The notes beneath the pieces are model-generated. The model did no database searches. It worked only from the letters and a program-made list of their open reading frames with translations, and was not told the DNA's origin. From Podarcis pityusensis (Eukaryota): a stretch of 64,000 nucleotides of DNA. Shown piece by piece: positions 32,216 through 34,422 of the stretch; the stretch's first letter is position 1, and each line of letters starts with the position of its first letter. Made by a program: the position numbers and the translations under genes. The stretch is from NCBI GenBank assembly GCA_964106645.2, contig OZ067047.1. One strand, written 5' to 3'.

Positions 32216-32386
<171 letters not shown>

Positions 32387-32453
32387 TTAAATTAAAAGAA
32401 CGATTCAGACTCTAAATGTCTCAAAGCGAGCAGAGGCTGCTGGCGTTACTCAC

Positions 32454-32478
32454 CGCAGAAGGGAGTAGATGGGTAGAC
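32454..32478 (-). other. WNK1: Candidate 25-nt microexon in intron 3 (phase 0-1, VYPSTPFC-G joining GTPEF)
   Basis: About 40 nt of polypyrimidine ending tctcacag|GTCTACCCATCTACTCCCTTCTGCG|gtgagt; 68 nt upstream of exon 4. Confidence 0.65.
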
Positions 32479-32779
32479 CTGTGAGAAAAGAAGAAGTGGA
32501 AGCAAAAAGAAGAGGGAGGAGACCCTCAGTCACTCTGTTTCATCAACGTATCCCATGGGTCTTCCATTGCAAGGCCTTTGCAAGAAGTGAGAAACCAACA
32601 GTTAAAGGTTTTTATGTTCACCATTTATATATATATTATAATGGAACAGAATCAGGGGGAACATGTGAAGATTTTAGTCATAATGGTATATGATTGAATC
32701 CCAGGTTGAAGATAAACGGAGAAAAATAAAGTAAGAGACTAGCTAGACTACAAACCAAATACTTGTTAGACACACTTAC

Positions 32780-32839
32780 CTTTCCTCCTTGTGAGAAAGG
32801 AGGTATGAGGCTTGTTTCAGCATCCCTGCCTGCCCTCTG
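32780..32839 (-). other. WNK1: Candidate 60-nt cassette exon in intron 3 (NAGNAG acceptor; phase-0 reading QRAGRDAETSLIPPFSQGGK)
   Basis: ttttttacag|CAG|AGG...GGAAAG|gtaagt; consensus donor. Confidence 0.65.
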
Positions 32840-33035
32840 CTGTAAAAAATTAGTACTGGAAAGAGTCCACAGCTAGTCTCTGACCCGTAACACTCCATTT
32901 ACTTCTGTTTAGTGTCACTTTAAACAAAGCCTTGCAATGAAAAACCCTGTGTTTATGAATAAAGGTTTCTTAAAAATTAATTTTTCAAAAATGTTCTGCA
33001 AAGGCCACTCACCAGAGCCCTTTTTACATACTTAC

Positions 33036-33096
33036 CATTTCACCTGCAGTACATTTTATAGGCCTACTGCAGATACAGGAAATAGTGAGGGACATC
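33036..33096 (-). other. WNK1: Candidate 61-nt cassette exon in intron 3 (an alternative donor at 33012 gives 84 nt)
   Basis: atttttgcctgtag|GATGTC...GAAATG|gtaagt, with a second strong donor CTG|gtgagt 23 nt downstream. Confidence 0.6.
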
Positions 33097-33286
33097 CTAC
33101 AGGCAAAAATACTCAGAAATATAGAGAGATTGAGTTATAGGCACAGAGGGCGAGATTCAATAAATCCTAATTTTAAAATCAATTTGTAGGAGGTGTATTA
33201 TCCCTGATGTATCAAACCAATGCACCCTTCCATTTCACAGAAATCTGCACTATATGAATCAGAGATATGTAAGAGCCAGAAATTAC

Positions 33287-33307
33287 CAATAAGCAGAGAA
33301 TTATTTC
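33287..33307 (-). other. WNK1: Candidate 21-nt microexon in intron 3 (phase 1-1, GNNSLLI)
   Basis: ctggtttgtttgcag|GAAATAATTCTCTGCTTATTG|gtaatt; open in the exon 3 frame; donor only moderate. Confidence 0.45.
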
Positions 33308-34201
33308 CTGCAAACAAACCAGATTGTATGCAAATTTACCAATCAATCACTTTTTACTTCCCTATCCATCTACCCATAATTCAGTGGTGTTCTAGCCTTA
33401 ACTGAAAGGGAGCATATTAATTCAGTTGTTCAAAAAAGTCAGAATATGGCAGTTTTCCAATTGAAAGTTGATCATAACATATGGAAAAGAGACTGCTATG
33501 TTAAGGAAGTTGGTCATTTCCCACTGAATATTCTCCCCTTTCCACTAACATTAATTGTTTCTAGACTGGCTGGAAAGCAGGAAATGTTTCATTGTCACAA
33601 AGGCCAAGATATTTGCAAATGTAAATTTGTATTGTTAAAATCAGGTATTACAACTTCTGAAAACAGAACTTCAGAAATAGCTGTAGATTGCATTCTAAAA
33701 ACACACACTAGCAGATGCAGACTAAAAAGGACTATCTTTTCCCTTGTTAGCTTGCATCCTTCACAAAACAAATAGCAGAACAGAGCTGTTAAAACCAATT
33801 ATCTGGTCATAGTTTCAGACCAGCTGACAAAGCTATTGTAGGGTACTTAAATGCAGCAGCCCAGAAATTTTAGGTATAAGGCAGAGGTTTGTATTTTTTT
33901 AAAAAAGAATTTTCATTAAAAACTCTGTGCTTCCCCTTAATCCCAGTTCAGAACAGTTATTTCAAAGGATGGAAATACTTTGGTTTTATCAAGTGTTCTG
34001 CTAAGTGAAAGAGCCTACACACCTTGAGAAGATTCTTTAGGAGAATACTAATATCAGGGACCCATATTTTATGAGACCTAAAACTCTAGAATTTTCAGGG
34101 ATGAAGCTTTTTTCATTTCCTTTTTTTGCTTTGTGAGAATTGGAAAATTCTATTAGGCAAATTTTCAAGTAAGAACTGCTAAAACAAAACCAGAAGCTTA
34201 C

Positions 34202-34422
34202 CTATCACACTCTTGGCAAAGGAAGCCCGCTTCAAGGTTGCCAGACCCAAGTCTCCTATCTTGACTGATCCTGTAGGGCCAGTAATAAAGATGTTGTCAC
34301 ACTTCAAGTCACGGTGGATAATGGGAGGAGTACGCGTGTGCAAGAACTGCAAACCCTTCAGTATTTGCCGGCACCAGCTTCGCAGTACTTTGATTTTCAT
34401 CACTTTAAACCTTTTTAAGTAC
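34202..34422 (-). CDS. WNK1: WNK1 exon 3 (221 nt): YLKRFKVMK...[15 protein letters not shown]...[19 protein letters not shown]
   Basis: Acceptor ctag|GTAC and donor ATAG|gtaagc. Contains the HRDLKCDN catalytic loop, the DLG motif and the activation-loop serine (S382 equivalent). Lies in ORF 34179..34580. Confidence 0.98.

What the first reader, a model, noticed from the sequence alone, without database searches (positions are those of the whole stretch)
32454..33307. Cluster of four candidate small exons that would insert into the WNK1 kinase activation loop
Seen: the 1.8-kb intron 3 has no repeat I recognise. On the transcribed strand it carries four AG...GT units: 21 nt (33307-33287), 61 nt (33096-33036), 60 nt (32839-32780) and 25 nt (32478-32454). 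Four near-consensus donors (G|GTAAGT twice, G|GTGAGT twice) fall within about 600 nt. The last three units read openly into exon 4 as ...[46 protein letters not shown]. Known: this junction lies between the autophosphorylated serine (SFAKSVIG) and the TPEFMAPE P+1 loop, and these units are not among the WNK1 alternative exons I know (4A, 8B, HSN2, 9, 11, 12, 26, 26a/b). Inference: a multi-exon splicing switch that remodels or disables the activation loop. I have an unverified recollection of similar inserts in some fish WNK1 predictions.
Basis: partly seen in the sequence, partly recalled or inferred. Interest (0 to 1): 0.85.

Follow-up and report, generated by a model that had tools for sequence, protein, structure and literature searches.

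The report
Conserved off-switch exons in WNK1 intron
An intron of the lizard salt-sensing kinase gene WNK1 holds several short exon-like units and two RNA stems that reptiles and birds have kept, and they most likely turn down the full-length kinase by spoiling or stalling its mRNA rather than adding a piece to the protein.

Summary
The four AG...GT units are at the stated coordinates in intron 3 of WNK1 (a Podarcis-like wall lizard). Three (61, 60, 25 nt) are real conserved elements: in five other reptile/bird loci their splice sites stay, with about 90% identity around them against 44% in the rest of the intron. The 21-nt unit's donor is not conserved. The coding reading fails: the 61-nt unit puts a conserved TAA 14 codons after exon 3, the 60-nt unit is 54-67 nt long across species, the 25-nt unit drifts in amino acids, and none of 313 squamate/bird WNK1 isoforms carries an insert. 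Two nested RNA stems enclose the 60-nt unit; every substitution keeps pairing. A 68-nt intron before exon 4 is 99-100% conserved. Best reading: a poison/decoy exon module under RNA-structure control that lowers kinase-bearing L-WNK1 but spares KS-WNK1. An 11-residue in-frame insert (8+25 nt) remains possible. Not found in the papers searched; the scan noted it only on this same stretch.

The parts
34202..34422 (-). WNK1 exon 3 (ends ...SFAKSVI, phase 1)
33287..33307 (-). Unit 1 (21 nt): acceptor at 33308 and about 15 nt after it conserved in sauropsids; donor not conserved. Not a conserved exon; the acceptor may be a further alternative 3' site of unit 2 (264-278 nt exon)
33097..33160 (-). Conserved branch-point/pyrimidine region and acceptor of unit 2 (86-91% identity in sauropsids, 69% in the mammal)
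33036..33096 (-). Unit 2 (61 nt; 59-60 nt in other sauropsids): several acceptors (AG ending 33097, 33067, 33064, 33044); TAA at 33058-33056 is in frame with exon 3 in all six sauropsids
33036..33043 (-). 8-nt sub-exon (acceptor 33044, donor 33035); acceptor and donor also kept in the mammal; 7 nt in one bird locus
32995..33035 (-). Two competing donors of unit 2 (33035 and 33012), 90-95% identity in sauropsids
32926..32947 (-). Outer stem, 5' arm
32864..32884 (-). Inner stem, 5' arm; covers about -45 to -24 before the unit-3 acceptor, where branch points normally lie
32780..32839 (-). Unit 3 (60 nt; 54-67 nt in others): acceptor and strong donor conserved, body and frame not; looped out by both stems
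32731..32749 (-). Inner stem, 3' arm
32557..32578 (-). Outer stem, 3' arm
32454..32478 (-). Unit 4 (25 nt in all five sauropsids with full sequence), very strong pyrimidine tract (19 of 20); frameshifting alone; read-through hits a conserved TGA at 32452-32450
32386..32453 (-). 68-nt intron between unit 4 and exon 4, 99-100% identical in sauropsids; ends in a weaker AAG acceptor
32228..32385 (-). WNK1 exon 4 (TPEFMAPE...); in-frame ATG at 32371-32369 is the start of a Crotalus RefSeq isoform

Best explanation
WNK1 intron 3 holds a non-coding cassette module (units 2, 3, 4) that regulates how much full-length, kinase-bearing L-WNK1 mRNA is made. Shown: conserved splice sites, non-conserved frame and peptide, premature stops in most combinations, two conserved nested stems around unit 3, a near-invariant 68-nt intron. 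Inferred: when the spliceosome uses these sites, the message gains a premature stop far upstream of many exon junctions and goes to nonsense-mediated decay (poison exon), or the sites engage the ends of intron 3 without splicing and the intron is held back (decoy exon). Inferred: the stems hide unit 3 (the inner one covers its branch-point zone) and bring the unit-2 donors next to the unit-4 acceptor, so folding speed or RNA-binding proteins set the outcome. The module lies upstream of exon 4a (22235-22149), so it would affect L-WNK1 but not the kinase-less KS-WNK1, shifting their ratio. Poison versus decoy cannot be told apart here (about 60:40 by my judgement).
For: Identity to four sauropsid loci: 86-95% around unit 2, 86-96% on three stem arms, 99-100% in the 68-nt intron, against 44-46% in the 5' part of the intron and 18-53% in the spacers. 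Unit 3 length 60/61/64/67/54/65; unit 2 gives TAA at codon 14 in all six; unit 4 alone frameshifts in all. Unit 4 codon changes are mostly non-synonymous while exons 3 and 4 show only synonymous ones. Stem energies -36 to -38 and -27 to -36 kcal/mol, beyond 199-200 of 200 shuffles in each of five species; 198 of 198 cells paired, six variable pairs, two with changes on both sides. 313 squamate/bird isoforms lack an insert while exon-4a isoforms are annotated. Same anatomy as BRD2 exon 3b/BRD3 exon 5b (PMC10789245) and SF3B1 intron-4 decoys (PMC6097662).
Against: Whole-region folding z-scores (-2.3 to -4.6) are matched by some other intronic windows, and stem limits were picked on this sequence. 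Only six sauropsid loci, four of them birds. One in-frame route (8+25 nt) survives in four of five species. In the mammal the stems and the donors of units 3 and 4 have decayed.
Confidence: 0.62

Rival explanations
1. Units 2-4 are 5' leader exons (or a reinitiation route) of a short, kinase-dead WNK1 that starts at the exon-4 methionine (MAPEMY), a second KS-WNK1-like isoform.
For: Leader exons need splice sites but no frame. RefSeq XP_039211536.1 (Crotalus tigris isoform X8, P0447) begins at MAPEMY. A TATAAA lies at 33060-33055.
Against: Unit 2 has several conserved acceptors with a conserved upstream tract, as an internal exon would. The TATA-like box is lost in L001 and the mammal. In birds an out-of-frame ATG in unit 2 overlaps the exon-4 start. 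One model among more than 300; it can equally be an annotation pipeline's longest ORF in a stop-containing transcript, and I could not see its mRNA.
Confidence: 0.12
2. A coding insert in the activation loop, in its only defensible form: 8-nt sub-exon + unit 4 = 11 residues, with the stems removing unit 3 so that this join is favoured.
For: 33 nt, open frame in this genome, L001, L005 and L013; unit 4 is fixed at 25 nt; the 8-nt unit is kept even in the mammal; the outer stem brings these two sites together.
Against: L002 has 7 nt and loses the frame; the peptide drifts (2-5 non-synonymous of 8 codons against this genome); the 8-nt acceptor has a poor pyrimidine tract; the 31-residue form exists only in this genome; no annotated isoform.
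Confidence: 0.1
3. The blocks are conserved for another reason (ADAR-editing duplex, enhancer, protein-binding site), and the splice-like motifs are seldom used.
For: 25-bp imperfect duplexes are typical ADAR substrates (general knowledge); no splicing seen.
Against: Conservation falls exactly on AG/GT sites, pyrimidine tracts and stem arms, not on the unit bodies; no Rfam match.
Confidence: 0.12
4. Chance cryptic sites with no function.
For: Unit 1 behaves so; GT/AG pairs are common.
Against: This is the longest conserved non-coding block found in the 40 kb shared with a kingfisher; cluster P about 1e-4.
Confidence: 0.04

Closest known systems
Poison exons controlled by conserved complementary regions: BRD2 exon 3b, BRD3 exon 5b (PMC10789245)
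   Same: Short stop-causing exon inside a conserved long-range stem of about -30 to -35 kcal/mol; conservation ends where pairing ends.
   Different: Here two nested stems, three units with several splice sites and a 68-nt near-invariant intron; in a signalling kinase; strong in sauropsids, decayed in the one mammal seen; no functional test.
Decoy exons in retained introns: SF3B1 intron 4 (E4a-f), OGT, ARGLU1, DDX39B (PMC6097662)
   Same: Intron over 1 kb with several short, conserved, non-coding exons and competing 5' and 3' sites.
   Different: Retention not observed here; RNA stems are not a described defining feature of those decoys in the passages I read.
Known WNK1 alternative exons 4a, 8b, HSN2, 9, 11, 12, 26, 26a, 26b (PMC3365125)
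   Same: Same gene; 4a, 8b and HSN2 are present in this window with conserved peptides.
   Different: All known ones are coding and lie downstream of exon 4; that survey does not mention intron 3.
KS-WNK1 (exon 4a first exon, kinase-less)
   Same: A start at the exon-4 Met would also give a kinase-dead protein with the C-terminal regions.
   Different: 4a has a conserved ATG and peptide; units 2-4 have neither and carry acceptors.

Membership tests
Structure-controlled poison exon (BRD2 3b / BRD3 5b type) | Exon with conserved splice sites inside an intron of a coding gene | tested here: met
   (units 2-4; not unit 1)
Structure-controlled poison exon (BRD2 3b / BRD3 5b type) | Inclusion gives a premature stop well upstream of later exon junctions | tested here: met
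   in silico: unit 2, unit 3 and unit 4, each alone, give a stop in every sauropsid with sequence; at least six coding exons follow exon 4 in the window; a few combinations stay in frame
Structure-controlled poison exon (BRD2 3b / BRD3 5b type) | Conserved complementary regions flank the exon, conservation tracking the pairing | tested here: met
   few sequences, two two-sided changes
Structure-controlled poison exon (BRD2 3b / BRD3 5b type) | Inclusion is seen in RNA and rises when NMD is blocked | not testable with these tools
Structure-controlled poison exon (BRD2 3b / BRD3 5b type) | Breaking the stem raises inclusion, compensatory change restores it | not testable with these tools
   needs minigene or antisense oligonucleotide
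Decoy exon (SF3B1 i4 / OGT / ARGLU1) | Intron over 1 kb with conserved short non-coding exons | tested here: met
   intron 1816-2035 nt in sauropsids
Decoy exon (SF3B1 i4 / OGT / ARGLU1) | Several competing 5' or 3' splice sites at the exon | tested here: met
   unit 2: two donors, four to five acceptors, conserved
Decoy exon (SF3B1 i4 / OGT / ARGLU1) | Host intron is retained, and retention needs the decoy sites; U2AF binds them | not testable with these tools
Coding cassette exon / microexon | Reading frame kept across species | tested here: not met
   93-nt route open only here; 33-nt route open in 4 of 5
Coding cassette exon / microexon | Peptide under purifying selection | tested here: not met
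   small numbers (8 codons)
Coding cassette exon / microexon | Isoform present in annotated proteins | tested here: not met
   0 of 313 squamate/bird isoforms; chicken and zebra finch were not among the listed hits
KS-WNK1-like alternative first exon | Conserved start codon/peptide and no upstream acceptor | tested here: not met
   unit-2 ATG absent in L001, out of frame in birds; acceptors conserved
KS-WNK1-like alternative first exon | Transcription start within intron 3 | not testable with these tools
   only indirect hint P0447

The most novel reading that the evidence does not exclude
The nested stems act as a three-way switch at the activation-loop junction of WNK1 in reptiles and birds: normal kinase, decay or retention, and a stable kinase-dead or loop-extended protein (11-residue insert, or a start at the exon-4 Met), set by RNA folding and possibly by temperature or salt stress; mammals have mostly lost it.
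Probability: 0.15. Interest if true: 0.78.

Novelty: new member of a known kind. Interest (0 to 1): 0.5.

Why it matters
WNK1 is a much-studied chloride and osmotic sensor whose splice catalogue lists only coding exons downstream of exon 4. A conserved unproductive-splicing module in intron 3 would be an unreported control of L-WNK1 dose that spares KS-WNK1. It gives a sharp test (NMD block, stem mutants, in chicken cells), and its decay in the one mammal seen marks a lineage difference. The mechanism class is known, and no RNA evidence was obtained, which limits the score.

Tried and rejected
Searching with the joined exon model was left out; the units alone are too short for the protein searches. 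Rfam: no match. Teleost locus L006 (Liparis) has no trace of the module; the other fish-like loci L011 and L012 end before it; alligator, Xenopus, shark and kangaroo-rat loci could not be fetched, so amphibians and the second fish paralogue are untested. Read-through ORFs P0004/P0005 may be of human origin and were not fetched or compared. L007 was judged non-human (seen on 7 contigs of one JGI series, no clear Alu, other SINEs). Assembly slip as the cause of the broken frame: rejected, since the 60-nt orthologues carry the same stop. Intronic polyadenylation: no AATAAA/ATTAAA in this intron, none conserved. Whole-region folding z-score alone: not discriminating. Seven paper searches and one supplement showed no report of WNK1 intron-3 exons.

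Full report
Setting. The window holds exons 2-9 of WNK1 on the minus strand. The HSN2 exon is 99% identical to the Podarcis raffonei protein and exon 4a is identical to that of a Podarcis muralis isoform, so the genome is a wall lizard or close kin. Intron 3 (34201-32386, 1816 nt, phase 1) splits the glycine codon between SFAKSVI and TPEFMAPE; a review places the activating Ser382 in this loop (PMC13686953).

Observation. Seven G|GTRAGT sites occur on the minus strand and four lie within 583 nt (P about 1e-4 under uniform placement, post hoc). The donors of units 2, 3 and 4 match U1 as well as or better than the true exon-4 donor; that of unit 1 is weak. From exon 3, every route through the 61-nt acceptor stops after 13 residues. 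An internal acceptor at 33044 gives an 8-nt sub-exon, and 8+60+25 or 8+25 nt are in frame in this genome.

Conservation. I fetched orthologous introns through read-through ORFs and a pattern scan: L001 (a non-bird reptile by exon-3 distances, species unknown), L002, L004, L013 (bird-like), L005 (kingfisher), L007 (non-human mammal) and L006 (snailfish). Against the four complete sauropsid loci, identity is 44-46% in the 5' part of the intron but 86-91% before unit 2, 89-90% in it, 90-95% over its two donors, 83-90% before unit 4 and 99-100% in the 68-nt intron before exon 4; exon 3 itself gives 84-88%. All splice sites of units 2, 3 and 4 are kept; the donor of unit 1 is lost in all, its acceptor kept. 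This is the longest conserved non-coding block in the 40 kb shared with the kingfisher. The mammal keeps the 8-nt unit with its acceptor and donor but has lost the 61-nt acceptor and the consensus donors of units 3 and 4, and carries SINE insertions in the loop. The fish copy examined has nothing similar.

Not coding. Unit 2 is 59-61 nt with a TAA at codon 14 in all six, so the extra base here is not the cause of the broken frame, while the PIKCTAGEM frame joins units 3 and 4 only because of it. Unit 4 is always 25 nt, frameshifts alone, and its read-through meets a conserved TGA. Its codon changes are mostly non-synonymous (2-5 of 8 codons), whereas exons 3 and 4 show none. The 93-nt route is open only here; the 33-nt route in four of five. 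Among 313 squamate and bird WNK1 proteins, retrieved with a region downstream of the kinase so as not to favour the plain junction, none has an insert, while exon-4a isoforms do appear. None of the 75 WNK proteins spanning this junction in the exon-3 search carries these peptides. One model, Crotalus tigris XP_039211536.1, starts at the exon-4 methionine; this hints at a transcript that reaches exon 4 out of frame or from a leader, but I could not see its mRNA.

RNA structure. Following an earlier scan note, I found two nested stems around unit 3: outer 32947-32926 with 32578-32557, inner 32884-32864 with 32749-32731. Duplex energies are -36 to -38 and -27 to -36 kcal/mol in five sauropsids, reached by at most 1 of 200 shuffles; they are not significant in the mammal. 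Three arms are 86-96% conserved (the fourth 65-70%) beside spacers at 18-53%. Over 33 pairs in six sequences all 198 cells pair; six pairs vary and two change on both sides. Caveats: few and related sequences, limits chosen on this sequence, and whole-region z-scores like these occur elsewhere in the window. The inner 5' arm covers the zone where the branch point of unit 3 would lie; the outer stem brings the unit-2 donors near the unit-4 acceptor.

Mechanism. Shown: conserved sites, unconserved frame, stops, conserved pairing. Inferred: use of the units sends L-WNK1 mRNA to nonsense-mediated decay or holds intron 3 unspliced, and the stems set how often. The first matches BRD2 exon 3b and BRD3 exon 5b, where such stems were shown by compensatory mutants to repress a poison exon (PMC10789245). 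The second matches SF3B1 intron 4, with several short conserved exons, and the multiple competing sites of the OGT, ARGLU1 and DDX39B decoys (PMC6097662). The same paper notes that one exon can do both. The very short, invariant intron before exon 4 suggests that the unit-4 donor and the exon-4 acceptor compete at close range (inference). Because the module lies before exon 4a, KS-WNK1 would escape it. I give this reading 0.62, a leader or reinitiation route to a kinase-dead form 0.12, a non-splicing role 0.12, a coding 11-residue insert 0.10 and chance 0.04.

What is missing. Amphibians, crocodilians by name and the second fish paralogue are untested.

Novelty. The survey of WNK1 isoforms lists exons 4a, 8b, HSN2, 9, 11, 12, 26, 26a, 26b and does not mention intron 3 (PMC3365125); seven searches found no report of this module, though the library lacks many journals and databases such as VastDB were not available. 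It works like a structure-controlled poison or decoy module; membership is met on anatomy and untested on function. Verdict: real, conserved, probably unreported, a new member of a known kind; interest 0.5.

Noticed in passing
window 22235-22149 (-): KS-WNK1 exon 4a homologue (29 residues, cysteine cluster), identical to the N-terminus of P. muralis XP_077791269.1; a conserved non-coding block at 22363-22306 just upstream may be its promoter.
   Followed up: partly
window 9533-9279 and 7890-6682 (-): Exon 8b and the HSN2 exon are present and open.
   Followed up: partly
window 11140-10932 (-): Conserved non-coding block (72-74% to kingfisher) about 400 nt downstream of exon 8, upstream of 8b/HSN2; no open frame seen; possible splicing element.
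   Followed up: no
P0447 (Crotalus tigris XP_039211536.1): RefSeq isoform that starts at the exon-4 Met (MAPEMY), lacking most of the kinase domain.
   Followed up: partly
L007 about 1850-2000 (mammal intron 3): The 8-nt unit with acceptor and strong donor survives in a mammal; a nearby acceptor would give a 27-nt exon without the sauropsid stop. Worth checking in mouse data.
   Followed up: partly
window 32385-32228: Exon 4 is more conserved at nucleotide level (90-96%) than exon 3 (82-88%); also so in fish, so it may reflect codon content.
   Followed up: partly
window 32842-32837 and 33069-33064 (-): Tandem acceptors (CAG CAG at unit 3; CAG TAG inside unit 2), mostly conserved in sauropsids.
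   Followed up: no
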